A stretch of 64,000 nucleotides of DNA from Auanema rhodensis (taxonomy: Eukaryota > Animalia > Nematoda): contig OZ059899.1 of assembly GCA_964057225.1 (NCBI GenBank), forward strand, positions 10,540,001 through 10,604,000. Reading direction: 5' to 3'. Each line of letters starts with the position of its first letter. The stretch's first letter is position 1. The notes under the pieces are model-generated. The model made no database searches. It had not been told where the DNA came from and saw only the letters and a list, made by a program, of their open reading frames with translations. The position numbers and the translations under genes were made by a program. Shown here piece by piece: positions 1 to 64,000 of the stretch.

Positions 1-412
1 AGCCGTATATATTTTTTTCTGGAATTCGAAAGCATTTGGGATGGATATTAGAAGGAAAAGAACTAGTTTTTCCTACTTTAAAACAAACAATAAGAAATAA
101 AATAAAAAAGATTGTTAGATATCCAATTTAAACTTATACATTTATTTTGATAAAGAGCCTATTAGTTTGAAATTTTATGTCTTACAGTTCTCCAACAGAA
201 CAGACTGATCCTGATTTCTCTATGATTACATAAAACTCTCGTTTGATATAAAAAAAGAAGAGGAATAACGTTTCCAGGATGTCAATGATATCGAATCTAG
301 TGATATTGTAGAAAAATGTAATGTCAGCTCCATAGGTTTTCTCTTAATTTCTCTCATCACAATTGTCTTAGTTTTTTTTCTCATTAGAGTTTCTGAAATC
401 TTAGGTGAACAA

Positions 413-417
413 GGCCG
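413..417 (+). pseudogene. 5-nt remnant (GGCCG) of the tRNA-Arg 5' end at the junction; representative of the short units
   Basis: Short unit reads GAACAA-GGCCG-TATATATTTT. Long unit reads GAACAA-GGCCG-CGTGG...(197 bp)...CATATATATTTT. Confidence 0.7.
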
Positions 418-2882: not shown

Positions 2883-2955
2883 GGCCGCGTGGCGCAATGG
2901 ATAACGCGTCTGCCTATGGAGCAGAAGATTGTAGGTTCGAATCCTGCCGTGGTCG
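2883..2955 (+). tRNA. tRNA-Arg(ACG)-derived gene with anticodon changed to ATG (nominal His); possibly a pseudogene
   Basis: Identical to the other nine copies except the anticodon loop, CTATGGA instead of CTACGGA (T at 2917). Cloverleaf, A box, B box (GGTTCGAATCC) and T7 terminator are intact. Confidence 0.85.
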
Positions 2956-2959
2956 TAAA

Positions 2960-2966
2960 TTTTTTT
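2960..2966 (+). terminator. Pol III oligo-T terminator (representative; present after all ten tRNA genes)
   Basis: TAAA then T7 directly follows the discriminator base. It is T8 at 3979-3986 in copy 2. Confidence 0.85.
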
Positions 2967-3901
2967 CATTTGACTTGTCATTTACAAAAATCAAATTTAT
3001 CTTCTTCAACGATTATTTTTGCAATGTGTCATAAAAATTTCACAGTTGAACAAAACGTTTTTTAAGAATTTTTTTTGTTGTCAACATATATATTTTCCTG
3101 GAATCCGAAAGCATTTGGGATGGAAATTAGAAAGAAAAGAACTAGTTTTTCCTATTTTAAAACAAACAAAAAAAAATAAAAAGAAAAAGATTGTTAGATA
3201 TCCAATTTAAACTTATACATTTACTTCGATAAAGAGCCTATTAGTTTGAAATTTTATGTCTTACAGTTCTCCAACAGAACAAACTGATCCTGATTTCTCT
3301 ATGATTACATAAAATTCTCGTTTGATATAAAAAAAGAAGAGGAATAACGTTTCCAGGATGTCAATGATATCGAATCTAGTGATATTGTAAAAAAATGTAA
3401 TGTCAGCTCCATATGTTTTCTCTTAATTTCTCTCATCACAATTGTCTTAGTTTTTTTTCTCATAAGAGTTTCTGAAATCTTAGGTGAACAAGGCCGTATA
3501 TATTTTTTTCTGGAATTCGAAAGCATTTGGGATGGAAATTAGAAAGAAAAGAACTAGTTTTTCCTACTTTAAAACGAACAATAAGAAATAAAATAAAAAA
3601 GATTGTTAGATATCCAATTTAAACTTATACATTTACTTCGATAAAGAGCCTATTAGTTTGAAATTTTATGTCTTACAGTTCTCCAACAGAACAAACTGAT
3701 CCTGATTTCTCTATGATTACATAAAATTCTCGTTTGATATAAAAAAAGAAGAGGAATAACGTTTCCAGGATATCAATGATATCGAATCTAGTGATATTGT
3801 AGAAAAATGTAATGTCAGCTCCATAGTTTTTCTCTAAATTTCTCTCATCACAATAGTCTTATTTTTTTTTCATAAGAGTTTCTGAAATCTTAGTTGAACA
3901 A

Positions 3902-3974
3902 GGCCGCGTGGCGCAATGGATAACGCGTCTGCCTACGGAGCAGAAGATTGTAGGTTCGAATCCTGCCGTGGTCG
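3902..3974 (+). tRNA. tRNA-Arg(ACG)
   Basis: GGCCGCGTGGCGCAATGGATAACGCGTCTGCCTACGGAGCAGAAGATTGTAGGTTCGAATCCTGCCGTGGTCG. Acceptor stem GGCCGCG/CGTGGTC, anticodon stem TCTGC/GCAGA with loop CTACGGA, T arm GTAGG-TTCGAAT-CCTGC, A20 present, no encoded CCA, no intron. Confidence 0.97.
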
Positions 3975-4919: not shown

Positions 4920-4992
4920 GGCCGCGTGGCGCAATGGATAACGCGTCTGCCTACGGAGCAGAAGATTGTAGGTTCGAATCCTGCCGTGGTCG
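4920..4992 (+). tRNA. tRNA-Arg(ACG)
   Basis: Identical 73-nt sequence to 3902-3974, followed by a T7 terminator. Confidence 0.97.
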
Positions 4993-7169
4993 TAAATTTT
5001 TTTCATTTGACTTGTCATTTACAAAAATCAAATTTATCTTCTTCAACGATTATTTTTGCAATGTGTCATAAAAATTTCACAGTTGAACAAAACGTTTTTT
5101 AAGAATTTTTTTTGTTGTCAACATATATATTTTCCTGGAATTCGAAAGCATTTGGGATGGAAATTAGAAAGAAAAGAACTAGTTTTTCCTATTTTAAAAC
5201 AAACAAAAAAAAAATAAAATGAAAAAGATTGTTAGATATCCAATTTAAACTTATACATTTACTTCGATAAAGAGCCTATTAGTTTGAAATTTTATGTCTT
5301 ACAGTTCTCCAACAGAACAGACTGATCCTGATTTCTCTATGATTACAAAAAACTCTCGTTTGATATAAAAAAAGAAGAGGAATAACGTTTCCAGGATGTC
5401 AATGATATCGAATCTAGTGATATTGTAAAAAAATGTAATGTCAGCTCCATAGGTTTTCTCTTAATTTCTCTCATCACAATTGTCTTAGTTTTTTTTCTCA
5501 TAAGAGTTTCTGAAATCTTAGGTGAACAAGGCCGTATATATTTTTTTCTGGAATTCGAAAGCATTTGGGATGGAAATTAGAAAGAAAAGAACTAGTTTTT
5601 CCTACTTTAAAACAAACAATAAGAAATAAAATAAAAAAGATTGTTAAATATCCAATTTAAACTCATACATTTACTTCGATAAAGAGCCTATTAGTTTGAA
5701 ATTTTATGTCTTACAGTTCTCCAACAGAACAGACTGATCCTGATTTCTCTATGATTATATAAAACTCTCGTTTGATATAAAAAAAGAAGAGGAATAACGT
5801 TTCCAGGATGTCAATGATATCGAATCTAGTGATATTGTAGAAAAATGTAATGTCAGCTCCATAGCTTTTCTCTTAATTTCTCTCATCACAATTGTCTTAG
5901 TTTTTTTCCATAAGAGTTTCTGAAATCTCACTTGACCAAGGCCTTATATATTTTTCTGGAATTCGAAAGTATTTAGGATGGAAATTAAAAAGAAAAGAAC
6001 TAGTTTTTCCTACTTTAAAACAAACAATAAGAAATAAAATAAAAAAGATTGTTAGATATCCAATTTAAACTTATACATTTACTTTGATAAAGAGCCTATT
6101 AGTTTGAAATTTTATGTCTTACAGTTCTCCAACAGAACAGACTGATCCTGATTTCTCTATGATTACATAAAACTCTCGTTTGATATAAAAAAAGAAGAGG
6201 AATAACGTTTCCAGGATGTCAATGATATCGAATCTAGTGATATTGTAGAAAAATGTAATGTCAGCTCCATAGGTTTTCTCTTAATTTCTCTCATCACAAT
6301 TGTCTTAGTTTTTTTTCTCATTAGAGTTTCTGAAATCTTAGGTGAACAAGGCCGTATATATTTTTTTCTGGAATTCGAAAGCATTTGGGATGGACATTAG
6401 AAGAAAAAGAACTTGTTTTTCCTACTTTAAAACAAACAAAAAAAAATAAAATGAAAAAGATTGTTAGATATCCAATTTAAACTTATACATTTACTTCGAT
6501 AAAGAGCCTATTAGTTTGAAATTTTATGTCTTACAGTTCTCCAACAGAACAGACTGATCCTGATTTCTCTATGATTACATAAAACTCTCGTTTGATATAA
6601 AAAAAGAAGAGGAATAACGTTTCCAGGATATCAATGATATCGAATCTAGTGATATTGTAGAAAAATGTAATGTCAGCTCCATAGTTTTTCTCTTAATTTC
6701 TCTCATCACAATAGTCTTATTTTTTTTTCATAAGAGTTTCTGAAATCTTAGTTGAACAAGGCCGTATATATATTTTCCTGGAATTCGAAAGCATTTGGGA
6801 TGGAAATTAGAAAGAAAAGAACTAGTTTTTCCTACTTTAAAACGAACAATAAGAAATAAAATAAAAAAGATTGTTAGATATCCAATTTAAACTTATACAT
6901 TTACTTCGATAAAGAGCCTATTAGTTTGAAATTTTATGTCTTACAGTTCTCCAACAGAACAGACTGATCCTGATTTCTCTATGATTACATAAAACTCTCG
7001 TTTGATATACAAAAAGGAGAGGAATAACGTTTCCAGGATATCAATGATATCGAATCTAGTGATATTGTAGAAAAATGTAATGTCAGCTCCATAGTTTTTC
7101 TCTAAATTTCTCTCATCACAATAGTCTTATTTTTTTTTCATAAGAGTTTCGGAAATCTTAGTTGAACAA

Positions 7170-7242
7170 GGCCGCGTGGCGCAATGGATAACGCGTCTGC
7201 CTACGGAGCAGAAGATTGTAGGTTCGAATCCTGCCGTGGTCG
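7170..7242 (+). tRNA. tRNA-Arg(ACG)
   Basis: Identical 73-nt sequence, followed by a T7 terminator. Confidence 0.97.
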
Positions 7243-7799
7243 TAAATTTTTTTCATTTGACTTGTCATTTACAAAAATCAAACTTATCTTCTTCAACGAT
7301 TATTTTTGCAATGTGTCATAAAAATTTCACAGTTGAACAAAACGTTTTTTGAGAATTTTTTTTGTTGTCAACATATATATTTTCCTGGAATTCGAAAGCA
7401 TTTGGGATGGAAATTAGAAAGAAAAGAACTAGTTTTTCCTATTTTAAAACAAACAAAAAAAAATAAAATGAAAAAGATTGTTAGATATCCAATTTAAACT
7501 TATACATTTACTTCGATAAAGAGCCTATTAGTTTGAAATTTTATGTCTTACAGTTCTCCAACAGAACAGACTGATCCTGATTTCTCTATGATTACATAAA
7601 ACTCTCGTTTGATATAAAAAAAGAAGAGGAATAACGTTTCCAGGATGTCAATGATATCGAATCTAGTGATATTGTAAAAAAATGTAATGTCAGCTCCATA
7701 GGTTTTCTCTTAATTTCTCTCATCACAATTGTCTTAGTTTTTTTTCTCATAAGAGTTTCTGAAATCTTAGGTGAACAAGGCCGTATATATTTTTTTCTG

Positions 7800-10700
7800 G
7801 AATTCGAAAGCATTTGGGAAGGAAATTAGAAAGAAAAGAACTAGTTTTTCCTACTTTAAAACAAATAATAAGAAATAAAATAAAAAAGATTGTTAGATAT
7901 CCAATTTAAACTTATACATTTACTTCGATAAAGAGCCTATTAGTTTGAAATTTTATGTCTTACAGTTCTCCAACAGAACAGACTGATCCTGATTTCTCTA
8001 TGATTATATAAAACTCTCGTTTGATATAAAAAAAGAAGAGGAATAACGTTTCCAGGATGTCAATGATATCGAATCTAGTGATATTGTAGAAAAATGTAAT
8101 GTCAGCTCCATAGGTTTTCTCTTAATTTCTCTCATCACAATTGTCTTAGTTTTTTTTCTCATAAGAGTTTCTGAAATCTTAGGTGAACAAGGCCGTATAT
8201 TTTTTTTTCTGGAAATCGGAAGCTTTTGGGATGGAAATTAGAAAGAAAAGAACTAGTTTTTCCTATTTTAAAACAAACAAAAAAAAATAAAATGAAAAAG
8301 ATTGTTAGATATCCAATTTAAACTTATACATTTACTTCGATAAAGAGCCTATTAGTTTGAAATTTTATGTCTTACAGTTCTCCAACAGAACAGACTGATC
8401 CTGATTTCTCTATGATTATATAAAACTCTCGTTTGATATAAAAAAAGAAGAGGAATAACGTTTCCAGGATGTCAATGATATCGAATCTAGTGATATTGTA
8501 GAAAAATGTAATGTCAGCTCCATAGGTTTTCTCTTAATTTCTCTCATCACAATTGTCTTAGTTTTTTTTCTCATAAGAGTTTCTGAAATCTTAGGTGAAC
8601 AAGGCCGTATATATTTTTTTCTGGAATTCGAAAGCATTTGGGATGGAAATTAGAAAGAAAAGAACTAGTTTTTCCTATTTTAAAACAAACAAAAAAAAAT
8701 AAAATGAAAAAGATTGTTAGATATCCAATTTAAACTTATACATTTACTTCGATAAAGAGCCTATTAGTTTGAAATTTTATGTCTTACAGTTCTCCTACAG
8801 AACAGACTGATCCTGATTTCTCTATGATTACATCAAACTCTCGTTCGATATAAAAAAAAGAAGAGGAATAACGTTTCTAGGATGTCATTGATATCGAATC
8901 TAGTGATATTGTAAAAAAATGTAATGTCAGCTCCATAGGTTTTCTCTTAATTTCTCTCATCACAATTGTCTTAGTTTTTTTTCTCATAAGAGTTTCTGAA
9001 ATCTTAGGTGAACAAGGCCGTATATATTTTTTTCTGGAATTCGAAAGCATTTGGGATGGAAATTAGAAAGAAAAGAACTAGTTTTTCCCATTTTAAAACA
9101 AACAAAAAAAAATAAAATGAAAAAGATTGTTAGATATCCAATTTAAACTTATACATTTACTTCGATAAAGAGCCTATTAGTTTGAAATTTTATGTCTTAC
9201 AGTTCTCCAACAGAACAGACTGATCCTGATTTCTCTATGATTATATAAAACTCTCGTTTGATATAAAAAAAGAAGAGGAATAACGTTTCCAGGATGTCAA
9301 TGATATCGAATCTAGTGATATTGTAGAAAAATGTAATGTCAGCTCCATAGGTTTTCTCTTAATTTCTCTCATCACAATTGTCTTAGTTTTTTTTCTCATA
9401 AGAGTTTCTGAAATCTTAGGTGAACATGGCCGTATATATTTTTTTCTGGAAATCGAAAGCATTTGGGATGGAAATTAGAAAGAAAAGAACTAGTTTTTCC
9501 TATTTTAAAACAAACAAAAAAAAATAAAATGAAAAAGATTGTTAGATATCCAATTTAAACTTATACATTTACTTCGATAAAGAGCCTATTAGTTTGAAAT
9601 TTTATGTCTTACAGTTCTCCAACAGAACAGACTGATCCTGATTTCTCTATGATTATATAAAACTCTCGTTTGATATAAAAAAAGAAGAGGAATAACGTTT
9701 CCAGGATGTCAATGATATCGAATCTAGTGATATTGTAGAAGAATGTAATGTCAGCTCCATAGGTTTTCTCTTAATTTCTCTCATCACAATTGTCTTAGTT
9801 TTTTTTCTCATAAGAGTTTCTGAAATCTTAGGTGAACAAGGCCGTATATATTTTTTTCTGGAATTCGAAAGCATTTGGGATGGAAATTAGAAAGAAAAGA
9901 ACTAGTTTTTCCTATTCTAAAACAAACAAAAAAAAATAAAATGAAAAAGATTGTTAGATATCCAATTTAAACTTATACATTTACTTCGATAAAGAGCCCA
10001 TTAGTTTGAAATTTTATGTCTTACAGTTCTCCAACAGAACAGACTGATCCTGATTTCTCTATGATTACATAAAACTCTCGTTTGATATAAAAAAGAAGAG
10101 GAATAACGTTTCCAGGATGTCAATGATATCGAATCTAGTGATATTGTAGAAAAATGTAATGTCAGCTCCATAGGTTTTCTCTTAATTTCTCTCATCACAA
10201 TTGTCTTAGTTTTTTTTCTCATAAGAGTTTCTGAAATCTTAGGTGAACAAGGCCGTATATATTTTTTTCTGGAATTCGAAAGCATTTGGGAAGGAAATTA
10301 GAAAGAAAAGAACTAGTTTTTCCTACTTTAAAACAAATAATAAGAAATAAAATAAAAAAGATTGTTAGATATCCAATTTAAACTTATACATTTATTTCGA
10401 TAAAGAGCCTATTAGTTTGAAATTTTATGTCTTACAGTTCTCCAACAGAACAGACTGATCCTGATTTCTCTATGATTATATAAAACTCTCGTTTGATATA
10501 AAAAAAGAAGAGGAATAACGTTTCCAGGATGTCAATGATATCGAATCTAGTGATATTGTAGAAAAATGTAATGTCAGCTCCATAGGTTTTCTCTTAATTT
10601 CTCTCATCACAATTGTCTTAGTTTTTTTTCTCATAAGAGTTTCTGAAATCTTAGGTGAACAAGGCCGTATATATTTTTTTCTGGAAATCGAAAGCTTTTG

Positions 10701-12750: not shown

Positions 12751-12899
12751 AAAGCATTTGGGATGGAAATTAGAAAGAAAAGAACTAGTTTTTCCTACTT
12801 TAAAACGAACAATAAGAAATAAAATAAAAAAGATTGTTAGATATCCAATTTAAACTTATACATTTACTTCGATAAAGAGCCTATTAGTTTGAAATTTTA

Positions 12900-15800
12900 T
12901 GTCTTACAGTTCTCCAACAGAACAGACTGATCCTGATTTCTCTATGATTACATAAAACTCTCGTTTGATATAAAAAAAGAAGAGGAATAACGTTTCCAGG
13001 ATGTCAATGATATCGAATCTAGTGATATTGTAGAAAAATGTAATGTCAGCTCCATAGGTTTTCTCTTAATTTCTCTCATCACAATTGTCTTAGTTTTTTT
13101 CCATAAGAGTTTCTGAAATCTTACTTGACCAAGGCCTTATATATTTTTCTGGAATTCGAAAGTATTTAGGATGGAAATTAAAAAGAAAAGAACTAGTTTT
13201 TCCTACTTTAAAACAAACAATAAGAAATAAAATAAAAAAGATTGTTAGATATCCAATTTAAACTTATACATTTACTTTGATAAAGAGCCTATTAGTTTGA
13301 AATTTTATGTCTTACAGTTCTCCAACAGAACAGACTGATCCTGATTTCTCTATGATTACATAAAACTCTCGTTTGATATAAAAAAAGAAGAGGAATAACG
13401 TTTCCAGGATGTCAATGATATCGAATCTAGTGATATTGTAGAAAAATGTAATGTCAGCTCCATAGGTTTTCTCTTAATTTCTCTCATCACAATTGTCTTA
13501 GTTTTTTTTCTCATTAGAGTTTCTGAAATCTTAGGTGAACAAGGCCGTATATATTTTTTTCTGGAATTCGAAAGCATTTGGGATGGACATTAGAAGAAAA
13601 AGAACTAGTTTTTCCTACTTTAAAACAAACAAAAAAAAATAAAATGAAAAAGATTGTTAGATATCCAATTTAAACTTATACATTTACTTTGATAAAGAGC
13701 CTATTAGTTTGAAATTTTATGTCTTACAGTTCTCCAACAGAACAGACTGATCCTGATTTCTCTATGATTACATAAAACTCTCGTTTGATATAAAAAAAGA
13801 AGAGGAATAACGTTTCCAGGATATCAATGATATCGAATCTAGTGATATTGTAGAAAAATGTAATGTCAGCTCCATAGTTTTTCTCTTAATTTCTCTCATC
13901 ACAATAGTCTTATTTTTTTTTCATAAGAGTTTCTGAAATCTTAGTTGAACAAGGCCGTATATATATTTTCCTGGAATTCGAAAGCATTTGGGATGGAAAT
14001 TAGAAAGAAAAGAACTAGTTTTTCCTACTTTAAAACGAACAATAAGAAATAAAATAAAAAAGATTGTTAGATATCCAATTTAAACTTATACATTTACTTC
14101 GATAAAGAGCCTATTAGTTTGAAATTTTATGTCTTACAGTTCTCCAACAGAACAGACTGATCCTGATTTCTCTATGATTACATAAAACTCTTGTTTGATA
14201 TACAAAAAGGAGAGGAATAACGTTTCCAGGATATCAATGATATCGAATCTAGTGATATTGTAGAAAAATGTAATGTCAGCTCCATAGGTTTTCTCTTAAT
14301 TTCTCTCATCACAATTGTCTTAGTTTTTTTTCTCATAAGAGTTTCTGAAATCTTAGGTGAACAAGGCCGTATATATTTTTTTCTGGAATTCGAAAGCATT
14401 TGGGATGGAAATTAGAAAGAAAAGAACTAGTTTTTCCTATTTTAAAACAAACAAAAAAAAATAAAATGAAAAAGATTGTTAGATATCCAATTTAAACATA
14501 TACATTTACTTCGATAAAGAGCCTATTAGTTTGAAATTTTATGTCTTACAGTTCTCCAACAGAACAGACTGATCCTGATTTCTCTATGATTACATAAAAC
14601 TCTCGTTTGATATAAAAAAAGAAGAGGAATAACGTTTCCAGGATGTCAATGATATCGAATCTAGTGATATTGTAGAAAAATGTAATGTCAGCTCCATAGG
14701 TTTTCTCTTAATTTCTCTCATCACAATTGTCTTAGTTTTTTTTCTCATAAGAGTTTCTGAAATCTTAGGTGAACAAGGCCGTATATATTTTTTTCTGGAA
14801 TTCGAAAGCATTTGGGATGGAAATTAGAAAGAAAAGAACTAGTTTTTCCTATTTTAAAACAAACAAAAAAAAATAAAATGAAAAAGATTGTTAGATATCC
14901 AATTTAAACTTATACATTTACTTCGATAAAGAGCCTATTAGTTTGAAATTTTATGTCTTACAGTTCTCCTACAGAACAGACTGATCCTGATTTCTCTATG
15001 ATTACATCAAACTCTCGTTCGATATAAAAAAAAGAAGAGGAATAACGTTTCTAGGATGTCATTGATATCGAATCTAGTGATATTGTAAAAAAATGTAATG
15101 TCAGCTCCATAGGTTTTCTCTTAATTTCTCTCATCACAATTGTCTTAGTTTTTTTTCTCATAAGAGTTTCTGAAATCTTAGGTGAACAAGGCCGTATATA
15201 TTTTTTTCTGGAATTCGAAAGCATTTGGGATGGAAATTAGAAAGAAAAGAACTAGTTTTTCCTATTTTAAAACAAACAAAAAAAAAAAAAATGAAAAAGA
15301 TTGTTAGATATCCAATTTAAACTTATACATTTACTTCGATAAAGAGCCTATTAGTTTGAAATTTTATGTCTTACAGTTCTCCAACAGAACAGACTGATCC
15401 TGATTTCTCTATGATTACATAAAACTCTCGTTTGATATAAAAAAAGAAGAGGAATAACGTTTCCAGGATGTCAATGATATCGAATCTAGTGATATTGTAG
15501 AAAAATGTAATGTCAGCTCCATAGGTTTTCTCTTAATTTCTCTCATCACAATTGTCTTAGTTTTTTTCCATAAGAGTTTCTGAAATCTTACTTGACCAAG
15601 GCCTTATATATTTTTCTGGAATTCGAAAGTATTTAGGATGGAAATTAAAAAGAAAAGAACTAGTTTTTCCTACTTTAAAACAAACAATAAGAAATAAAAT
15701 AAAAAAGATTGTTAGATATCCAATTTAAACTTATACATTTACTTTGATAAAGAGCCTATTAGTTTGAAATTTTATGTCTTACAGTTCTCCAACAGAACAG

Positions 15801-23700: not shown

Positions 23701-26700
23701 AGGATGTCAATGATATCGAATCTAGTGATATTGTAGAAAAATGTAATGTCAGCTCCATAGGTTTTCTCTTAATTTCTCTCATCACAATTGTCTTAGTTTT
23801 TTTTCTCATAAGAGTTTCTGAAATCTTAGGTGAACAAGGCCGTATATATTTTTTTCTGGAATTCGAAAGCATTTGGGATGGAAATTAGAAAGAAAAGAAC
23901 TAGTTTTTCCTATTTTAAAACAAACAAAAAAAAATAAAATGAAAAAGATTGTTAGATATCCAATTTAAACTTATACATTTACTTCGATAAAGAGCCCATT
24001 AGTTTGAAATTTTATGTCTTACAGTTCTCCAACAGAACAGACTGATCCTGATTTCTCTATGATTATATAAAACTCTCGTTTGATATAAAAAAAGAAGAGG
24101 AATAACGTTTCCAGGATGTCAATGATATCGAATCTAGTGATATTGTAGAAAAATGTAATGTCAGCTCCATAGGTTTTCTCTTAATTTCTCTCATCACAAT
24201 TGTCTTAGTTTTTTTTCTCATAAGAGTTTCTGAAATCTTAGGTGAACAAGGCCGTATATATTTTTTTCTGGAAATCGAAAGCTTTTGGGATGGAAATTAG
24301 AAAGAAAAGAACTAGTTTTTCCTATTTTAAAACAAACAAAAAAAAATAAAATGAAAAAGATTGTTAGATATCCAATTTAAACTTATACATTTACTTCGAT
24401 AAAGAGCCTATTAGTTTGAAATTTTATGTCTTACAGTTCTCCAACAGAACAGACTGATCCTGATTTCTCTATGATTATATAAAACTCTCGTTTGATATAA
24501 AAAAAGAAGAGGAATAACGTTTCCAGGATGTCAATGATATCGAATCTAGTGATATTGTAGAAAAATGTAATGTCAGCTCCATAGGTTTTCTCTTAATTTC
24601 TCTCATCACAATTGTCTTAGTTTTTTTTCTCATAAGAGTTTCTGAAATCTTAGGTGAACAAGGCCGTATATATTTTTTTCTGGAATTCGAAAGCATTTGG
24701 GATGGAAATTAGAAAGAAAAGAACTAGTTTTTCCTATTTTAAAACAAACAAAAAAAAATAAAATGAAAAAGATTGTTAGATATCCAATTTAAACTTATAC
24801 ATTTACTTCGATAAAGAGCCTATTAGTTTGAAATTTTATGTCTTACAGTTCTCCTACAGAACAGACTGATCCTGATTTCTCTATGATTACATCAAACTCT
24901 CGTTCGATATAAAAAAAAGAAGAGGAATAACGTTTCCAGGATGTCATTGATATCGAATCTAGTGATATTGTAAAAAAATGTAATGTCAGCTCCATAGGTT
25001 TTCTCTTAATTTCTCTCATCACAATTGTCTTAGTTTTTTTTCTCATAAGAGTTTCTGAAATCTTAGGTGAACAAGGCCGTATATATTTTTTTCTGGAATT
25101 CGAAAGCATTTGGGATGGAAATTAGAAAGAAAAGAACTAGTTTTTCCTATTTTAAAACAAACAAAAAAAAATAAAATGAAAAAGATTGTTAGATATCCAA
25201 TTTAAACTTATACATTTACTTCGATAAAGAGCCTATTAGTTTGAAATTTTATGTCTTACAGTTCTCCAACAGAACAGACTGATCCTGATTTCTCTATGAT
25301 TATATAAAACTCTCGTTTGATATAAAAAAAGAAGAGGAATAACGTTTCCAGGATGTCAATGATATCGAATCTAGTGATATTGTAGAAAAATGTAATGTCA
25401 GCTCCATAGGTTTTCTCTTAATTTCTCTCATCACAATTGTCTTAGTTTTTTTTCTCATAAGAGTTTCTGAAATCTTAGGTGAACAAGGCCGTATATATTT
25501 TTTTCTGGAAATCGAAAGCATTTGGGATGGAAATTAGAAAGAAAAGAACTAGTTCTTCCTATTTTAAAACAAACAAAAAAAAATAAAATGAAAAAGATTG
25601 TTAGATATCCAATTTAAACTTATACATTTACTTCGATAAAGAGCCTATTAGTTTGAAATTTTATGTCTTACAGTTCTCCAACAGAACAGACTGATCCTGA
25701 TTTCTCTATGATTACATAAAACTCTCGTTTGATATAAAAAAAGAAGAGGAATAACGTTTCCAGGATGTCAATGATATCGAATCTAGTGATATTGTAGAAG
25801 AATGTAATGTCAGCTCCATAGGTTTTCTCTTAATTTCTCTCATCACAATTGTCTTAGTTTTTTTTCTCATAAGAGTTTCTGAAATCTTAGGTGAACAAGG
25901 CCGTATATATTTTTTTCTGGAATTCGAAAGCATTTGGGATGGAAATTAGAAAGAAAAGAACTAGTTTTTCCTATTCTAAAACAAACAAAAAAAAATAAAA
26001 TGAAAAAGATTGTTAGATATCCAATTTAAACTTATACATTTACTTCGATAAAGAGCCCATTAGTTTGAAATTTTATGTCTTACAGTTCTCCAACAGAACA
26101 GACTGATCCTGATTTCTCTATGATTACATAAAACTCTCGTTTGATATAAAAAAGAAGAGGAATAACGTTTCCAGGATGTCAATGATATCGAATCTAGTGA
26201 TATTGTAGAAAAATGTAATGTCAGCTCCATAGGTTTTCTCTTAATTTCTCTCATCACAATTGTCTTATTTTTTTTTCATAAGAGTTTCTGAAATCTTAGT
26301 TGAACAAGGCCGTATATATATTTTCCTGGAATTCGAAAGCATTTGGGATGGAAATTAGAAAGAAAAGAACTAGTTTTTCCTACTTTAAAACGAACAATAA
26401 GAAATAAAATAAAAAAGATTGTTAGATATCCAATTTAAACTTATACATTTACTTCGATAAAGAGCCTATTAGTTGGAAATTTTATGTCTTACAGTTCTCC
26501 AACAGAACAGACTGATCCTGATTTCTCTATGATTACATAAAACTCTCGTTTGATATAAAAAAAGAAGAGGAATAACGTTTCCAGGATGTCAATGATATCG
26601 AATCTAGTGATATTGTAGAAAAATGTAATGTCAGCTCCATAGGTTTTCTCTTAATTTCTCTCATCACAATTGTCTTAGTTTTTTTCCATAAGAGTTTCTG

Positions 26701-29178: not shown

Positions 29179-29251
29179 GGCCGCGTGGCGCAATGGATAA
29201 CGCGTCTGCCTACGGAGCAGAAGATTGTAGGTTCGAATCCTGCCGTGGTCG
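29179..29251 (+). tRNA. tRNA-Arg(ACG)
   Basis: Identical 73-nt sequence, followed by a T7 terminator; lies in the 3.89-kb higher-order repeat. Confidence 0.97.
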
Positions 29252-32200: not shown

Positions 32201-33066
32201 CTTAGTTTTTTTTCTCATTAGAGTTTCTGAAATCTTAGGTGAACAAGGCCGTATATATTTTTTTCTGGAATTCGAAAGCATTTGGGATGGACATTAGAAG
32301 AAAAAGAACTAGTTTTTCCTACTTTAAAACAAACAAAAAAAAATAAAATGAAAAAGATTGTTAGATATCCAATTTAAACTTATACATTTACTTCGATAAA
32401 GAGCCTATTAGTTTGAAATTTTATGTCTTACAGTTCTCCAACAGAACAGACTGATCCTGATTTCTCTATGATTACATAAAACTCTCGTTTGATATAAAAA
32501 AAGAAGAGGAATAACGTTTCCAGGATATCAATGATATCGAATCTAGTGATATTGTAGAAAAATGTAATGTCAGCTCCATAGTTTTTCTCTTAATTTCTCT
32601 CATCACAATAGTCTTATTTTTTTTTCATAAGAGTTTCTGAAATCTTAGTTGAACAAGGCCGTATATATATTTTCCTGGAATTCGAAAGCATTTGGGATGG
32701 AAATTAGAAAGAAAAGAACTAGTTTTTCCTACTTTAAAACGAACAATAAGAAATAAAATAAAAAAGATTGTTAGATATCCAATTTAAACTTATACATTTA
32801 CTTCGATAAAGAGCCTATTAGTTTGAAATTTTATGTCTTACAGTTCTCCAACAGAACAGACTGATCCTGATTTCTCTATGATTACATAAAACTCTCGTTT
32901 GATATACAAAAAGGAGAGGAATAACGTTTCCAGGATATCAATGATATCGAATCTAGTGATATTGTAGAAAAATGTAATGTCAGCTCCATAGTTTTTCTCT
33001 AAATTTCTCTCATCACAATAGTCTTATTTTTTTTTCATAAGAGTTTCGGAAATCTTAGTTGAACAA

Positions 33067-33139
33067 GGCCGCGTGGCGCAATGGATAACGCGTCTGCCTA
33101 CGGAGCAGAAGATTGTAGGTTCGAATCCTGCCGTGGTCG
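33067..33139 (+). tRNA. tRNA-Arg(ACG)
   Basis: Identical 73-nt sequence, 3888 bp after the previous copy. Confidence 0.97.
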
Positions 33140-36100: not shown

Positions 36101-36953
36101 CTCATTAGAGTTTCTGAAATCTTAGGTGAACAAGGCCGTATATATTTTTTTCTGGAATTCGAAAGCATTTGGGATGGACATTAGAAGAAAAAGAACTAGT
36201 TTTTCCTACTTTAAAACAAACAAAAAAAAATAAAATGAAAAAGATTGTTAGATATCCAATTTAAACTTATACATTTACTTCGATAAAGAGCCTATTAGTT
36301 TGAAATTTTATGTCTTACAGTTCTCCAACAGAACAGACTGATCCTGATTTCTCTATGATTACATAAAACTCTCGTTTGATATAAAAAAAGAAGAGGAATA
36401 ACGTTTCCAGGATATCAATGATATCGAATCTAGTGATATTGTAGAAAAATGTAATGTCAGCTCCATAGTTTTTCTCTTAATTTCTCTCATCACAATAGTC
36501 TTATTTTTTTTTCATAAGAGTTTCTGAAATCTTAGTTGAACAAGGCCGTATATATATTTTCCTGGAATTCGAAAGCATTTGGGATGGAAATTAGAAAGAA
36601 AAGAACTAGTTTTTCCTACTTTAAAACGAACAATAAGAAATAAAATAAAAAAGATTGTTAGATATCCAATTTAAACTTATACATTTACTTCGATAAAGAG
36701 CCTATTAGTTTGAAATTTTATGTCTTACAGTTCTCCAACAGAACAGACTGATCCTGATTTCTCTATGATTACATAAAACTCTCGTTTGATATACAAAAAG
36801 GAGAGGAATAACGTTTCCAGGATATCAATGATATCGAATCTAGTGATATTGTAGAAAAATGTAATGTCAGCTCCATAGTTTTTCTCTAAATTTCTCTCAT
36901 CACAATAGTCTTATTTTTTTTTCATAAGAGTTTCGGAAATCTTAGTTGAACAA

Positions 36954-37026
36954 GGCCGCGTGGCGCAATGGATAACGCGTCTGCCTACGGAGCAGAAGAT
37001 TGTAGGTTCGAATCCTGCCGTGGTCG
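36954..37026 (+). tRNA. tRNA-Arg(ACG)
   Basis: Identical 73-nt sequence, 3887 bp after the previous copy. Confidence 0.97.
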
Positions 37027-50334: not shown

Positions 50335-50407
50335 GGCCGCGTGGCGCAATGGATAACGCGTCTGCCTACGGAGCAGAAGATTGTAGGTTCGAATCCTGCC
50401 GTGGTCG
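50335..50407 (+). tRNA. tRNA-Arg(ACG)
   Basis: Identical 73-nt sequence; 3' trailer of the second subfamily (TCATGAAAATTTCTTAATTGAAC). Confidence 0.97.
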
Positions 50408-53400: not shown

Positions 53401-53820
53401 ATGTGAACAAGGCCGTATATATTTTTTTCTGGAATTCGAAAGCATTTGGGATGGAAATTAGAAAGAAAAGAACTAGTTTTTCCTATTTTAAAACAAACAA
53501 AAAAAAATAAAATGAAAAAGATTGTTAGATATTCAATTTAAACTTATACATTTACTTCGATAAAGAGCCTATTAGTTTGAAATTTTATGTCTTACAGTTC
53601 TCCAACAGAACAGACTGATCCTGATTTCTCAATGATTACATAAAACTCTCGTTTGATATACAAAAAGGAGAGGAATAACGTTTCCAGGATATCAATGATA
53701 TCGAATCTAGTGATATTGTAGAAAAATGTAATGTCAGCTCCATAGTTTTTCTCTAAATTTCTCTCATCACAATAGTCTTATTTTTTTTTCATAAGAGTTT
53801 CTGAAATCTTAGTTGAACAA

Positions 53821-53893
53821 GGCCGCGTGGCGCAATGGATAACGCGTCTGCCTACGGAGCAGAAGATTGTAGGTTCGAATCCTGCCGTGGTCG
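53821..53893 (+). tRNA. tRNA-Arg(ACG)
   Basis: Identical 73-nt sequence; second trailer subfamily. Confidence 0.97.
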
Positions 53894-56071
53894 TAAATTT
53901 TTTTCATTTCACTTGTCATTTACAAAAATCAAATTTATCTTCTTCAACGATTATTTTTGCAATGTGTCATGAAAATTTCTTAATTGAACAAAACGTTTTT
54001 TGAGAAGTTTTTTTGTTGTCAACATATATTTTTTTCTGGAATTCGAAAGCATTTGGGATGGAAATTAGAAGGAAAAGAACTAGTTTTTCCTACTTTAAAA
54101 CAAACAATAAGAAATAAAATAAAAAAGATTGTTAGATATCCAATTTAAACTTATACATTTACTTTGATAAAGAGCCTATTAGTTTGAAATTTTATGTCTT
54201 ACAGTTCTCTAACAGAACAGACTGATTCTGATTTCTCTATGATTACATAAAACTCTCGTTTGATATAAAAAAAGAAGAGGAATAACGTTTCCAGGATGTC
54301 AATGATATCGAATCTAGTGATATCGTAGAAAAATGTAATGTCAGCTCCATAGGTTTTCTCTTAATTTCTCTCATCACAATTGTCTTAGTTTTTTTTCTCA
54401 TAAGAGTTTCTGAAATCTTACGTGAACAAGGCCGTATATATTTTTTTCTGGAATTCGAAAGCATTTGGGATGGAAATTAGAAAGAAAAGAACTAGTTTTT
54501 CCTACTTTAAAACAAACAATAAGAAATAAAATAAAAAAGATTGTTAGATATCCAATTTAAACTTATACATTTACTTCGATAAAGAGCCTATTAGTTTGAA
54601 ATTTTATGTCTTACAGTTCTCCAACAGAACAGACTGATCCTGATTTCTCTATGATCACATAAAACTCTCGTTTGATATGAAAAAAAAGAGGAATAACGTT
54701 TCCAGGATGTCAATGATATCGAATCTAGTGATATTGTAGAAAAATGTAATGTCAGCTCCATAGGTTTTCTCTCAATTTCTCTCATCACAATTGTCTTAGT
54801 TTTTTTTCTCATAAGAGTTTCTGAAATCTTAGGTGAACAAGGCCGTATATATTTTTTTCTGGAATTCGAAAGCATTTGGGATGGAAATTAGAAGGAAAAG
54901 AACTAGTTTTTCCTACTTTAAAACAAACAATAAGAAATAAAATAAAAAAGATTGTTAGATATCCAATTTAAACTTATACATTTACTTTGATAAAGAGCCT
55001 ATTAGTTTGAAATTTTATGTCTTACAGTTCTCTAACAGAACAGACTGATTCTGATTTCTCTATGATTACATAAAACTCTCGTTTGATATACACAAAGGAG
55101 AGGAATAACGTTTCCAGGATATCAATGATATCGAATCTAGTGATATTGTAGAAAAATGTAATGTCAGCTCCATAGTTTTTCTCTTAATTTCTCTCATCAC
55201 AATAGTCTTATTTTTTTTCATAAGAGTTTCTGAAATCTTAGGTGAACAAGGCCGTATATATTTTTTTCTGGAATTCGAAAGCATTTGGGATGGAAATTAG
55301 AAAGAAAAGAACTAGTTTTTCCTATTTTAAAACAAACAAAAAAAAATAAAATGAAAAAGATTGTTAGATATCCAATTTAAACTTATACATTTACTTCGAT
55401 AAAGAGCCTATTAGTTTGAAATTTTATGTCTTACAGTTCTCCAACAGAACAGACTGATCCTGATTTCTCTATGATTATATAAAACTCTCGTTTGATATAA
55501 AAAAATAAGAGGAATAACGTTTCCAGGATATCAATGATATCGAATCTAGTGATATTGTAGAAAAATGTAATGTCAGCTCCATAGGTTTTCTCTTAATTTC
55601 TCTCATCACAATTGTCTTAGTTTTTTTTCTCATAAGAGTTTCTGAAATCTTATGTGAACAAGGCCGTATATATTTTTTTCTGGAATTCGAAAGCATTTGG
55701 GATGGAAATTAGAAAGAAAAGAACTAGTTTTTCCTATTTTAAAACAAACAAAAAAAAATAAAATGAAAAAGATTGTTAGATATTCAATTTAAACTTATAC
55801 ATTTACTTCGATAAAGAGCCTATTAGTTTGAAATTTTATGTCTTACAGTTCTCCAACAGAACAGACTGATCCTGATTTCTCAATGATTACATAAAACTCT
55901 CGTTTGATATACAAAAAGGAGAGGAATAACGTTTCCAGGATATCAATGATATCGAATCTAGTGATATTGTAGAAAAATGTAATGTCAGCTCCATAGTTTT
56001 TCTCTAAATTTCTCTCATCACAATAGTCTTATTTTTTTTTCATAAGAGTTTCTGAAATCTTAGTTGAACAA

Positions 56072-56144
56072 GGCCGCGTGGCGCAATGGATAACGCGTCT
56101 GCCTACGGAGCAGAAGATTGTAGGTTCGAATCCTGCCGTGGTCG
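56072..56144 (+). tRNA. tRNA-Arg(ACG)
   Basis: Identical 73-nt sequence, 2251 bp after the previous copy; second trailer subfamily. Confidence 0.97.
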
Positions 56145-59100: not shown

Positions 59101-62100
59101 AATTGTCTTAGTTTTTTTTCTCATAAGAGTTTCTGAAATCTTAGGTGAACAAGGCCGTATATATTTTTTTCTGGAATTCGAAAGCATTTGGGATGGAAAT
59201 TAGAAAGAAAAGAACTAGTTTTTCCTATTTTAAAACAAACAAAAAAAAAATAAAATGAAAAAGATTGTTAGATATCCAATTTAAACTTATACATTTACTT
59301 CGATAAAGAGCCTATTAGTTTGAAATTTTATGTCTTACAGTTCTCCAACAGAACAGACTGATCCTGATTTCTCTATGATTACATAAAACTCTCGTTTGAT
59401 ATAAAAAAAGAAGAGGAATAACGTTTCCAGGATGTCAATGATATCGAATCTAGTGATATTGTAGAAAAATGTAATGTCAGCTCCATAGGTTTTCTCTTAA
59501 TTTCTCTCATCACAATTGTCTTAGTTTTTTTTCTCATAAGAGTTTCTGAAATCTTAGGTGAACAAGGCCGTATATATTTTTTTCTGGAATTCGAAAGCAT
59601 TTGGGATGGAAATTGGAAAGAAAAGAACTAGTTTTTCCTACTTTAAAACAAACAATAAGAAATAAAATAAAAAAGATTGTTAGATATCCAATTTAAACTC
59701 ATACATTTACTTTGATAAAGAGCCTATTAGTTTAAAATTTTATGTCTTACAGTTCTCCAACAGAACAGACTGATCCTGATTTCTCTATGATTACATAAAA
59801 CTCTCGTTTGATATAAAAAAAGAAGAGGAATAACGTTTCCAGGATGTCAATGATATCGAATCTAGTGATATTGTAAAAAAAAGTAATGTCAGCTCCATAG
59901 GTTTTCTCTTAATTTCTCTCATCACAATTGTCTTAGTTTTTTTTCTCATAAGAGTTTCTGAAATCTTAGGTGAACAAGGCCGTATATATTTTTTTCTGGA
60001 ATTCGAAAGCATTTGGGATGGAAATTAGAAAGAAAAGAACTAGTTTTTCCTATTTTAAAACAAACAAAAAAAAATAAAATGAAAAAGATTGTTAGATATT
60101 CAATTTAAACTTATACATTTACTTCGATAAAGAGCCTATTAGTTTGAAATTTTATGTCTTACAGTTCTCCAACAGAACAGACTGATCCTGATTTCTCTAT
60201 GATTACATCAAACTCTCGTTTGATATAAAAAAAAGAAGAGGAATAACGTTTCCAGGATGTCATTGATATCGCATCTAGTGATATTGTAGAAAAATGTAAT
60301 GTCAGCTCCATAGGTTTTCTCTTAATTTCTCTCATCACAATTGTCTTAGTTTTTTTTCTCATAAGAGTTTCTGAAATCTTAGGTGAACAAGGCCGTATAT
60401 ATTTTTTTCTGGAATTCGAAAGCATTTGGGATGGAAATTGGAAAGAAAAGAACTAGTTTTTCCTACTTTAAAACAAACAATAAGAAATAAAATAAAAAAG
60501 ATTGTTAGATATCCAATTTAAACTCATACATTTACTTTGATAAAGAGCCTATTAGTTTAAAATTTTATGTCTTACAGTTCTCCAACAGAACAGACTGATC
60601 CTGATTTCTCTATGATTACATAAAACTCTCGTTTGATATAAAAAAAGAAGAGGAATAACGTTTCCAGGATGTCAATGATATCGAATCTAGTGATATTGTA
60701 AAAAAATGTAATGTCAGCTCCATAGGTTTTCTCTTAATTTCTCTCATCACAATTGTCTTAGTTTTTTTTCTCATAAGAGTTTCTGAAATCTTAGGTGAAC
60801 AAGGCCGTATATATTTTTTTCTGGAATTCGAAAGCATTTGGGATGGAAATTGGAAAGAAAAGAACTAGTTTTTCCTATTTTAAAACAAACAAAAAAAAAT
60901 AAAATGAAAAAGATTGTTAGATATTCAATTTAAACTTATACATTTACTTCGATAAAGAGCCTATTAGTTTGAAATTTTATGTCTTACAGTTCTCCAACAG
61001 AACAGACTGATCCTGATTTCTCTATGATTACATCAAACTCTCGTTTGATATAAAAAAAAGAAGAGGAATAACGTTTCCAGGATGTCATTGATATCGAATC
61101 TAGTGATATTGTAGAAAAATGTAATGTCAGCTCCATAGGTTTTCTCTTAATTTCTCTCATCACAATTGTCTTAGTTTTTTTTCTTATAAGAGTTTCTGAA
61201 ATCTTAGGTGAACAAGGCCGTATATATTTTTTTCTGGAATTCGAAAGCATTTGGGATGGAAATTGGAAAGAAAAGAACTAGTTTTTCCTACTTTAAAACA
61301 AACAATAAGAAATAAAATAAAAAAGATTGTTAGATATCCAATTTAAACTCATACATTTACTTTGATAAAGAGCCTATTAGTTTAAAATTTTATGTCTTAC
61401 AGTTCTCCAACAGAACAGACTGATCCTTATTTCTCTATGATTACATAAAACTCTCGTTTGATATAAAAAAAGAAGAGGAATAACGTTTCCAGGATGTCAA
61501 TGATATCGAATCTAGTGATATTGTAAAAAAATGTAATGTCAGCTCCATAGGTTTTCTCTTAATTTCTCTCATCACAATTGTCTTAGTTTTTTTTCTCATA
61601 AGAGTTTCTGAAATCTTAGGTGAACAAGGCCGTATATATTTTTTTCTGGAATTCGAAAGCATTTGGGATGGAAATTAGAAAGAAAAGAACTAGTTTTTCC
61701 TATTTTAAAACAAACAAAAAAAAAATAAAATGAAAAAGATTGTTAGATATTCAATTTAAACTTATACATTTACTTCGATAAAGAGCCTATTAGTTTGAAA
61801 TTTTATGTCTTACAGTTCTCCAACAGAACAGACTGATCCTGATTTCTCTATGATTATATAAAACTCTCGTTTGATATAAAAAAAGAAGAGGAATAACGTT
61901 TCCAGGATGTCAATGATATCGAATCTAGTGATATTGTAGAAAAATGTAATGTCAGCTCCATAGGTTTTCTCTTAATTTCTCTCATCACAATTGTCTTAGT
62001 TTTTTTTCTCATAAGAGTTTCTGAAATTTTAGGTGATCAAGGCCGTATATATTTTTTTCTGGAATTCGAAAGCATTTGGGATGGAATTTATAAAGAAAAG

Positions 62101-64000
62101 AACTAGTTTTTCCTATTTTAAAACAAACAAAAAAAAATAAAATGAAAAAGATTGTTAGATATCCATCTTAAACTTATACATTTACTTCGATAAAGAGCCT
62201 ATTAGTTTGAAATTTTATGTCTTACAGTTCTCCAACAGAACAGACTGATCCTGATTTCTCTATGATTACATCAAACTCTCGTTTGATATAAAAAAGAAGA
62301 GGAATAACGTTTCCAGGATGTCATTGATATCGAATCTAGTGATATTGTAAAAAAATGTAATGTCAGCTCCATAGGTTTTCTCTTAATTTCTCTCATCACA
62401 ATTGTCTTAGTTTTTTTTCTCATAAGAGTTTCTGAAATCTTAGGTGAACAAGGCCGTATATATTTTTTTCTGGAATTCGAAAGCATTTGGGATGGAAATT
62501 AGAAAGAAAAGAACTAGTTTTTCCTATTTTAAAACAAACAAAAAAAAATAAAATGAAAAAGATTGTTAGATATCCAATTTAAACTTATACATTTACTTCG
62601 ATAAAGAGCCTATTAGTTTGAAATTTTATGTCTTACAGTTCTCCAACAGAACAGACTGATCCTGATTTCTCTATGATTATATAAAACTCTCGTTTGATAT
62701 AAAAAAAGAAGAGGAATAACGTTTCCAGGATGTCAATGATATCGAATCTAGTGATATTGTAGAAAAATGTAATGTCAGCTCCATAGGTTTTCTCTTAATT
62801 TCTCTCATCACAATTGTCTTAGTTTTTTTTCTCATAAGAGTTTCTGAAATCTTAGGTGAACAAGGCCGTATATATTTTTTTCTGGAATTCGAAAGCATTT
62901 GGGATGGAAATTAGAAAGAAAAGAACTAGTTTTTCCTATTCTAAAACAAACAAAAAAAAATAAAATGAAAAAGATTGTTAGATATCCATCTTAAACTTAT
63001 ACATTTACTTCGATAAAGAGCCTATTAGTTTGAAATTTTATGTCTTACAGTTCTCCAACAGAACAGACTGATCCTGATTTCTCTATGATTACATCAAACT
63101 CTCGTTTGATATAAAAAAGAAGAGGAATAACGTTTCCAGGATGTCATTGATATCGAATCTAGTGATATTGTAAAAAAATGTAATGTCAGCTCCATAGGTT
63201 TTCTCTTAATTTCTCTCATCACAATTGTCTTAGTTTTTTTTCTCATAAGAGTTTCTGAAATCTTAGGTGAACAAGGCCGTATATATTTTTTTCTGGAATT
63301 CGAAAGCATTTGGGATGGAAATTAGAAAGAAAAGAACTAGTTTTTCCTATTTTAAAACAAACAAAAAAAAATAAAATGAAAAAGATTGTTAGATATCCAA
63401 TTTAAACTTATACATTTACTTCGATAAAGAGCCTATTAGTTTGAAATTTTATGTCTTACAGTTCTCCAACAGAACAGACTGATCCTGATTTCTCTATGAT
63501 TATATAAAACTCTCGTTTGATATAAAAAAAGAAGAGGAATAACGTTTCCAGGATGTCAATGATATCGAATCTAGTGATATTGTAGAAAAATGTAATGTCA
63601 GCTCCATAGGTTTTCTCTTAATTTCTCTCATCACAATTGTCTTAGTTTTTTTTCTCATAAGAGTTTCTGAAATCTTAGGTGAACAAGGCCGTATATATTT
63701 TTTTCTGGAAATCGAAAGCATTTGGGATGGAAATTAGAAAGAAAAGAACTAGTTTTTCCTATTTTAAAACAAACAAAAAAAAATAAAATGAAAAAGATTG
63801 TTAGATATCCAATTTAAACTTATACATTTACTTCGATAAAGAGCCTATTAGTTTGAAATTTTATGTCTTACAGTTCTCCAACAGAACAGACTGATCCTGA
63901 TTTCTCTATGATTATATAAAACTCTCGTTTGATATAAAAAAAGAAGAGGAATAACGTTTCCAGGATGTCAATGATATCGAATCTAGTGATATTGTAGAAG

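What the first reader, a model, noticed from the sequence alone, without database searches (positions are those of the whole stretch)
1..64000. A satellite that appears to be a tRNA gene array with most of the tRNAs deleted
Seen: ~140 short units and 10 long units are the same sequence apart from one ~197-bp block (tRNA from position ~6, terminator, 3' trailer). The short units normally retain GGCCG, the first five bases of the mature tRNA, exactly at the junction. Known: tandem tRNA gene arrays exist in eukaryotes (Entamoeba is the extreme case), and satellites can derive from spacers of rDNA/5S arrays. Inference: a 607-bp tRNA-Arg(ACG) repeat suffered one internal deletion, and the empty unit then expanded to >90% of the array here. 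This would be a snapshot of satellite birth from a Pol III gene array, with live genes still embedded. Whether it has been described for this organism cannot be judged here.
Basis: partly seen in the sequence, partly recalled or inferred. Interest (0 to 1): 0.8.

Follow-up and report, generated by a model that had tools for sequence, protein, structure and literature searches.

The report
tRNA-Arg gene array decaying into satellite
This 64-kb tandem repeat is a tRNA-Arg gene array in which one old ~198-bp deletion removed the gene from most units, so it shows a gene array turning into non-coding satellite DNA; the scan has already seen the same system elsewhere on this chromosome piece.

Summary
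The window holds 150 complete head-to-tail units: 140 short (408-413 bp) and 10 long (607 bp). The two kinds differ by one 197-199-bp block: tRNA nt 6-73, a T7-T8 run, and a ~125-bp trailer. All 140 short units share one junction, and 130 keep GGCCG (tRNA nt 1-5).

The deletion reading is the best supported, at about 0.8.
- GGCCG is the only G/C run of 4 or more in the 71% A+T unit. Its chance at a fixed site is about 6e-5.
- The block runs about 125 bp past the Pol III terminator and has no inverted ends or target duplication, so it is not a retrocopy or transposon.
- The trailer is more diverse among long units (3.9%) than the shared flanks are (1.3-2.7%), so the block is old.
- Two related organisms carry very high-copy tRNA-Arg(ACG) with other flanks.

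Direction is inferred, not proven. The flank tree is unrooted, and the long units nest beside one short subtype.

Both unit kinds are co-amplified in 2-14-unit blocks at 99.8-100% identity, with exchange on both sides of the block. Nine of ten tRNAs are identical; expression is untested.

The scan reached the same reading on other windows of this genome. Its species label, Auanema rhodense, is unverified here. I found no paper describing this route for tRNA arrays.

The parts
1..64000 (+). Tandem array of 150 complete units plus two partial end units: 140 short (408-413 bp) and 10 long (607 bp). G+C is 28.8%.
2883..2955 (+). tRNA gene with an Arg body and anticodon ATG (ACG>ATG, a CpG>TpG change), in long unit u006
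3902..3974 (+). tRNA-Arg(ACG) gene, long unit u008
4920..4992 (+). tRNA-Arg(ACG) gene, long unit u010
7170..7242 (+). tRNA-Arg(ACG) gene, long unit u015. A box TGGCGCAATGG, B box GGTTCGAATCC, and a T7 run starting 4 nt after the 3' end.
7175..7373 (+). The 197-199-bp block that is absent from short units: tRNA nt 6-73, terminator T-run and ~125-bp 3' trailer
   Evidence: (joint 7174->7374)
29179..29251 (+). tRNA-Arg(ACG) gene, first copy of a 9-unit (3887-3889 bp) higher-order repeat
33067..33139 (+). tRNA-Arg(ACG) gene, second copy of the 9-unit higher-order repeat
36954..37026 (+). tRNA-Arg(ACG) gene, third copy at the 3887-bp period
50335..50407 (+). tRNA-Arg(ACG) gene. Its trailer belongs to a subfamily that differs at 7 trailer sites from the 7170/29179/33067/36954 group.
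53821..53893 (+). tRNA-Arg(ACG) gene. This long unit has a short-type 3' flank, so it is a product of exchange.
56072..56144 (+). tRNA-Arg(ACG) gene
6530..6939 (+). Example of a 'type 1' short unit (410 bp; 12 in the window). It carries long-type variants on both sides of the junction GGCCG|TATATATATTTTCC. This is the empty form closest to the long units, and it often lies directly 5' of one.

Best explanation
The array began as head-to-tail 607-bp units. Each unit held a Pol III-transcribed tRNA-Arg(ACG) gene (internal A and B boxes, T-run terminator) and a ~534-bp A+T-rich spacer. One blunt deletion of ~198 bp, with no microhomology and perhaps one added T, removed tRNA nt 6-73, the terminator and ~125 bp of trailer. 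That left a 410-412-bp unit with no promoter that still starts with tRNA nt 1-5 (GGCCG). Unequal exchange then duplicated blocks of 2-14 units of both kinds. Crossing-over or gene conversion moved flank variants between filled and empty units. In this window the empty units reached 93%. Shown here: the binary structure, the single junction, the co-amplification, the exchange and the intact gene sequence. Inferred: the direction (deletion rather than insertion), a single event, and that the remaining genes are active.
For: Structure: there are 140 short and 10 long units and no intermediate lengths. All 140 short units share the same junction, and 130 read GGCCG there.

Chance: GGCCG is the only G/C run of 4 or more in the 412-bp consensus. 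Its probability is 6e-5 at a fixed site and 0.008-0.026 anywhere in a unit.

Not a mobile element: the block continues ~125 bp beyond a T7-T8 run that starts 4 nt after the tRNA 3' end. It has no poly-A, no inverted ends and no flanking duplication.

Age of the block: among the 10 long units, pairwise diversity is 0.039 in the trailer and 0.013 in their flanks. It is 0.025 in short-unit flanks. The trailer falls into three subgroups. A recent insert would be more uniform than this.

Constraint on the gene: the tRNA has 1 variable site in 73 nt against 12 in 130 nt of trailer (Fisher p = 0.035), although it is 60% G+C in a 29% G+C array. In organism A's contigs no variant reaches 5% inside the tRNA.

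Relatives: in organisms B and C the tRNA part has depth 5e4-5e5 with other flanks, while this spacer has depth 70-900. High-copy tRNA-Arg(ACG) is therefore wider than this satellite.

Amplification and exchange: blocks repeat at lags of 825, 1237, 2472, 2885, 3887-3889 and 5737 bp at 99.8-100% identity, some of them including a tRNA. All four gametes occur between block presence and sites 156-163 bp upstream and 7-12 bp downstream.

Untested context: the scan's notes list arrays on the same piece with ~50% filled units, and many other tRNA-gene arrays in this genome.
Against: The flank-only tree is unrooted. The long units plus 2 short units form one 95%-supported split inside a larger set that holds the type-1 short units. 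This is equally what an insertion into a type-1 short unit would give.

In this window no long unit carries the majority short-type alleles at sites 8-133 bp upstream. Short units here are more numerous and have more flank haplotypes.

I could not read an orthologous array in a related species. The low-depth signal in B and C could be cross-sample carry-over, since X8 is from the same study as X1.

No transcription evidence was obtained. The only RNA-run contig has depth 3.4 and may be DNA.
Confidence: 0.8

Rival explanations
1. Insertion. A 412-bp satellite existed first. A piece of a tRNA-Arg locus (gene plus trailer) was copied into one unit during break repair or template switching, primed on a pre-existing GGCCG. 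The filled unit then spread by unequal exchange.
For: Long units nest next to one short subtype in the flank tree. Long units are few here and their flanks are uniform, with diversity 0.013 against 0.025 for short units. In organism A the tRNA part is deeper than the trailer (3.7-5.5e5 against 1.2-2.7e5), so other tRNA-Arg loci or trailer types may exist as donors.
Against: It needs the satellite to have held GGCCG by chance (0.008-0.026 per unit), and that microhomology to coincide exactly with tRNA nt 1-5. Trailer diversity is three times that of the long units' own flanks, which a younger insert does not predict. No donor locus was seen. Tandem tRNA arrays are reported to be the rule in this genome (preprint 10.64898/2026.08.27.747507).
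Confidence: 0.1
2. Recurrent deletion. The same ~198 bp is lost repeatedly from filled units by a site-directed or structure-driven process, so empty units arise many times rather than once.
For: Type-1 short units carry long-type flanks on both sides and often lie directly 5' of a long unit. The flank tree needs 2 changes of state.
Against: The breakpoints have no direct repeat or microhomology that could guide recurrence. There are no intermediate lengths or alternative junctions in 140 units. The mixed flank combinations follow from exchange, which the four-gamete result shows on both sides of the block.
Confidence: 0.06
3. Assembly artefact. The order or mixture of long and short units comes from collapsing or mis-joining near-identical repeats.
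For: Multi-kilobase stretches are 99.8-100% identical, which is hard for any assembler. No laid record spans a whole unit.
Against: Both junction types occur in independent short-read contig sets of organism A. Unit variants form consistent higher-order patterns rather than random mixtures. The scan's notes report the same two unit kinds in several other windows. An artefact could change the order and counts but not the existence of the two forms.
Confidence: 0.03

Closest known systems
Satellites derived from 5S rDNA or rDNA intergenic spacers (5SHindIII of Hoplias, PcP190 of Physalaemus, the Plantago B-chromosome repeat, IGS-derived plant satellites; listed in the references of PMC12692304)
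   Same: A tandem RNA-gene array gives rise to a non-coding satellite whose monomer is homologous to part of the gene repeat and is then amplified on its own.
   Different: Here the source is a tRNA array and the satellite is the spacer with the gene cleanly cut out by one deletion. Filled and empty units are still interleaved in the same array at 96-99% flank identity, so both states are seen side by side. That review does not contain the word tRNA.
tRNA-like tandem repeats of amphibians (Xenopus OAX, Rana/PolIII, newt PolIII/TAN from retroposed tRNA-Glu; cited in PMC12054243)
   Same: Tandem repeats with a tRNA ancestry and Pol III elements.
   Different: In those repeats every monomer keeps the tRNA-like part, and a SINE or retroposition origin is proposed. 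Here the abundant monomer has lost the tRNA apart from 5 nt, and the block shows no retroposition marks.
Tandem tRNA gene arrays (Entamoeba, Xenopus, zebrafish chromosome 4 and Arabidopsis from my own knowledge; A. rhodense germline-restricted tRNA arrays in preprint 10.64898/2026.08.27.747507)
   Same: Head-to-tail units each hold an intact tRNA gene with internal promoter and terminator. The 10 long units here are of this kind.
   Different: 93% of the units in this window have no gene. The preprint treats tRNA arrays and satellite-type repeats as separate classes and does not link them.

Membership tests
Tandem tRNA gene array | Units carry a full-length tRNA that folds as a cloverleaf and scores as a tRNA | tested here: met
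   This holds for the 10 long units. ARAGORN and Rfam RF00005 give 58.3-58.9 bits against a gathering score of 29. The acceptor, D and T stems appear in the fold.
Tandem tRNA gene array | Internal A and B boxes and a downstream T-run terminator | tested here: met
   A box TGGCGCAATGG, B box GGTTCGAATCC, and a T7-T8 run 4 nt after the 3' end in all 10 copies. The consensus motifs are from my own knowledge.
Tandem tRNA gene array | Every unit, or nearly every unit, holds the gene | tested here: not met
   Only 10 of 150 units hold it.
Tandem tRNA gene array | The genes are transcribed | tested here: inconclusive
   The one RNA run laid gave a single contig at depth 3.4 on the 5' flank, which may be DNA.
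Satellite DNA | Long head-to-tail arrays of a non-coding monomer at high copy number | tested here: met
   The array fills 64 kb without interruption. Summed contig depth is ~1e6 in organism A. No RNA family reaches its gathering score outside the tRNAs. ORFs in the sampled stretch 6500-8300 are at most 73 aa.
Satellite DNA | Higher-order repeat structure and local homogenisation | tested here: met
   Blocks of 2-14 units repeat at 99.8-100% identity.
Satellite derived from an RNA-gene array | The monomer is homologous to the spacer of the gene repeat | tested here: met
   Short units align over their full length to the flanks of the long units. Mean divergence is 4.0% and the minimum is 1.5%.
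Satellite derived from an RNA-gene array | A remnant of the gene at the expected place shows the direction | tested here: met
   tRNA nt 1-5 (GGCCG) lie at the junction in 130 of 140 units. This is the only G/C run of 4 or more in the monomer, with a chance of 6e-5 at a fixed site.
Satellite derived from an RNA-gene array | The ancestral gene-only array is seen in an outgroup | not testable with these tools
   Only coded short-read contigs of relatives were available. They show high-copy tRNA-Arg(ACG) with other flanks.
tRNA-derived SINE or retroposed tandem repeat | The tRNA-like promoter part is kept in the monomer, with retroposition marks (transcript-length copy, A-rich tail, target duplication) | tested here: not met
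   Short units lack the A and B boxes. The block extends ~125 bp past the terminator and has no tail or duplication.
Named germline-restricted repeat families of Auanema rhodense (AT-1, XR-1, XT-1, XT-2) | Matches the published FISH probe of the family | tested here: not met
   None of the four probes matches the window on either strand with up to 6 mismatches. The families AT-2, AC-I to AC-VI, XC and XR-2 have no published sequence that I could read.

The most novel reading that the evidence does not exclude
The array lies in DNA kept only in the germline of a nematode that discards most of its genome from body cells. The embedded tRNA-Arg genes would then be held intact by selection as a germline or early-embryo tRNA supply, or as chromatin or pairing landmarks, while the gene-less units expand freely beside them. 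This would be a Pol III gene array under split selection inside eliminated DNA.
Probability: 0.12. Interest if true: 0.8.

Novelty: new variant of a known kind. Interest (0 to 1): 0.5.

Why it matters
Satellites are known to arise from rDNA spacers and 5S repeats, but the founding step is usually long gone. Here the filled and empty states coexist in one array and are separated by a single identifiable deletion. That makes the founding mutation, the spread by unequal exchange and the fate of the remaining genes all measurable in one genome. If the genome is Auanema rhodense, as another agent of this scan inferred, this would tie part of its huge load of tandem repeats to its 19,554 tRNA genes, two features the 2026 preprint reports separately. 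It would also open the question of whether Pol III genes in eliminated DNA are used.

Tried and rejected
1. A second small-RNA gene in the spacer. Each unit gives a weak Y_RNA match (21-23 bits against a gathering score of 38, E 0.07-0.1). The terminal stem has many non-pairs and the fold z-score is +0.74, so I rejected it as chance in A+T-rich sequence ending in a T-run.

2. The trailer as a decayed copy of the tRNA 5' flank. The 10-mer AGTTGAACAA occurs both right before the tRNA and in the trailer. The best local alignment of trailer against spacer scores 17 (23 on the opposite strand), against a mean of 20.4 for shuffles, so I rejected it.

3. Microhomology, inverted ends or target duplication at the block ends. 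None is visible in the sequence.

4. Polarising the flank variants with a tree. The tree is unrooted and there is exchange, so it cannot give direction.

5. Relatives in metagenomes. The junction-flank pattern found nothing. A conserved 18-mer found 46 contigs, each with one match of 20-41 nt and no further similarity, so these are chance.

6. Naming the repeat family from the preprint. Its four FISH probes do not match, and its tables are images.

7. Literature on a spacer-only satellite from a tRNA array. Seven text searches found none.

8. Bacterial promoter and terminator scans do not apply to this organism and gave nothing above shuffles.
Full report
OBSERVATION

TRF reports a 411-412-bp period across all 64 kb, split only at nine gaps of about 199 bp. 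Anchoring on a conserved 18-mer gives 151 anchors and 150 complete units. Of these, 140 are 408-413 bp and 10 are exactly 607 bp, with nothing in between.

ARAGORN and Rfam each find ten 73-nt tRNAs on the + strand, one in each long unit, at 58.3-58.9 bits against a gathering score of 29. Nine are identical tRNA-Arg(ACG). The copy at 2883-2955 has anticodon ATG, a CpG-to-TpG change.

After the shared ...TGAACAA, the long units read GGCCG|CGTGGCG.... The short units read GGCCG|TATATAT... in 130 cases, GGCCT in 9 and AGCCG in 1.

The block missing from short units is 197-199 bp, depending on the TA/T-run register. It holds tRNA nt 6-73, a T7-T8 run that starts 4 nt after the gene, and about 125 bp of trailer.

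INDEPENDENT READS

I laid Logan contigs of four coded runs on one long unit, window:6940-7546.
- In organism A (run X1), summed depth is about 1.0-1.4 million on the shared flanks, 0.12-0.27 million on the trailer and 0.37-0.55 million on the tRNA.
- A contig joins 7174 to 7374 ('skips 199'), and loose ends before 7374 read ...GAACAAGGCCG. Both forms therefore exist outside this assembly.
- Roughly a quarter of units genome-wide carry the trailer, against 6.7% in this window. Summed contig depth is only a rough guide to copy number.
- In organisms B (X6) and C (X8), the tRNA part has depth 5e4-5e5. Its neighbours there are other sequences, seen as loose ends at 7165-7176 and 7241-7258.
- In B and C this spacer has depth only 70-900 and the trailer 22-70. 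High-copy tRNA-Arg(ACG) is therefore shared by the relatives, while this spacer is abundant only in A.
- The weak spacer signal in B and C may be real low-copy sequence or carry-over. X8 is from the same study as X1.

DIRECTION OF THE CHANGE

Four lines favour deletion.
1. GGCCG is the only run of four or more G/C in the 412-bp consensus, which is 71% A+T. Its chance is about 6e-5 at a fixed site and 0.008-0.026 anywhere in a unit. It is exactly nt 1-5 of the gene.
2. The block is not a Pol III transcript copy or a transposon. It runs about 125 bp past the terminator and has no A-tail, no inverted ends and no flanking duplication.
3. The block is old. Among the ten long units, pairwise diversity is 0.039 in the trailer. 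It is 0.013 in their own flanks and 0.025 in the flanks of the short units. The trailers fall into three subgroups that differ at up to nine sites.
4. By the scan's notes and a 2026 preprint, this genome is full of tandem tRNA arrays.

Against this, the flank-only tree cannot be rooted. All ten long units sit with two short units in one supported split, inside a set that also holds the 'type 1' short units. Type 1 units are 410 bp with junction GGCCG|TATATATATTTTCC and carry long-type variants on both sides. That pattern fits deletion from such a long unit and insertion into such a short unit equally well.

I put deletion at about 0.8, insertion at 0.1, recurrent deletion at 0.06 and an assembly artefact at 0.03.

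ONE EVENT AND ITS MECHANISM

All 140 short units share one junction, and there are no intermediate lengths. The breakpoints share no microhomology. Type 1 reads as 'long minus 198 bp plus one T', which is the look of blunt end joining. One event spread by exchange is therefore the economical reading.

Exchange is directly visible. All four combinations of block presence with neighbouring variants occur at 156-163 bp upstream and at 7-12 bp and 48 bp or more downstream. Long unit u126 (53591-54197) has a short-type 3' flank, and several short units have long-type 5' flanks.

AMPLIFICATION

Unit haplotypes recur in fixed orders. One example is a nine-unit block that starts with a long unit, at 28949-32836 and 32837-36723. 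Others are six-, three- and two-unit blocks.

Ungapped self-comparison gives 99.8-100% identity at lags of 825, 1237, 2472, 2885, 3887-3889 and 5737 bp. Genes and empty units are thus copied together by recent multi-unit duplication.

ARE THE GENES LIVE?

The sequence is intact, with a seven-pair acceptor stem, A box TGGCGCAATGG, B box GGTTCGAATCC and a terminator.

There is a modest signal of constraint.
- The tRNA has 1 variable site in 73 nt, against 12 in 130 nt of trailer (Fisher p = 0.035).
- No variant reaches 5% inside the tRNA in organism A's contigs.
- This holds although the gene is 60% G+C in a 29% G+C array.

Gene conversion from other copies could give the same picture. Transcription was not shown: the RNA run gave one contig at depth 3.4 on the 5' flank.

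WHAT ELSE WAS LOOKED FOR

- A weak Y_RNA-like match in every unit (21-23 bits, E 0.07-0.1) has a poor terminal stem and no folding signal (z = +0.74). I reject it.
- A 10-mer shared by the tRNA's 5' flank and the trailer is within chance.
- Metagenome scans gave only chance 18-mer hits.

CONTEXT AND PRIOR WORK

Earlier notes of this scan describe the same 607/410-412-bp system at several places up to about 1.4 Mb before this window. Some stretches there are about half filled. Two follow-up agents reached the same deletion reading on other windows.

Another agent named the genome Auanema rhodense. I could not test this, because the window holds no gene other than the tRNA.

The preprint 10.64898/2026.08.27.747507 reports that this species discards about 61% of its germline genome. 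That DNA is mostly tandem repeats of 167-504 bp. The preprint annotates 19,554 tRNA loci, with tRNA arrays in the eliminated DNA. It treats satellites and tRNA arrays as separate classes. Its four FISH probes do not match this window.

Satellites from 5S or rDNA spacers are well known (references in PMC12692304). tRNA-like tandem repeats are known in amphibians (PMC12054243). My seven text searches found no description of a spacer-only satellite cut out of a tRNA array.

VERDICT

It is a new variant of a known route (RNA-gene array to satellite), and the scan has already found it on neighbouring DNA of the same genome. Interest is moderate.

Noticed in passing
window 2883-2955: One array copy has an Arg body with anticodon ATG (His) through a C>T change at the CpG of ACG. 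It is otherwise identical to the other nine. It is either a dead copy or a potential mis-decoder. The scan also noted it (s1-384199).
   Followed up: partly
window 7170-7250 as laid in runs X6 and X8: Two related organisms hold tRNA-Arg(ACG) at very high contig depth (5e4-5e5) with flanks unlike this spacer. Organism C has T>C at 7219 in essentially all copies. Massive tRNA-Arg arrays therefore seem to be shared by the group while the spacers turn over.
   Followed up: partly
window, e.g. 5710-6117, 12903-13310, 26488-26895: Nine units form a 408-bp subfamily. They have junction GGCCT, a shorter T-run and about ten linked changes. They almost always sit in the same three-unit order (408, 412, 410 bp), a nested higher-order repeat.
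   Followed up: partly
window 8062-8155 and the same place in other units: A weak Y_RNA-like covariance match ends in the T-run about 35 bp upstream of the tRNA start. It is below threshold, has no fold signal, and I judged it to be chance.
   Followed up: yes
run X1 loose ends at 7373: Organism A also holds empty-unit junctions that read ...AGTTGAACAAGGCAGT (GGCAG instead of GGCCG) on a long-type 5' flank. This variant is not present in this window.
   Followed up: no
window 32001-37000: Stretches of 1.2 kb are 100% identical at a lag of 3887 bp. This points to very recent duplication of a nine-unit block that includes a tRNA gene, and it is also a place where assembly order should be checked on raw long reads.
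   Followed up: partly
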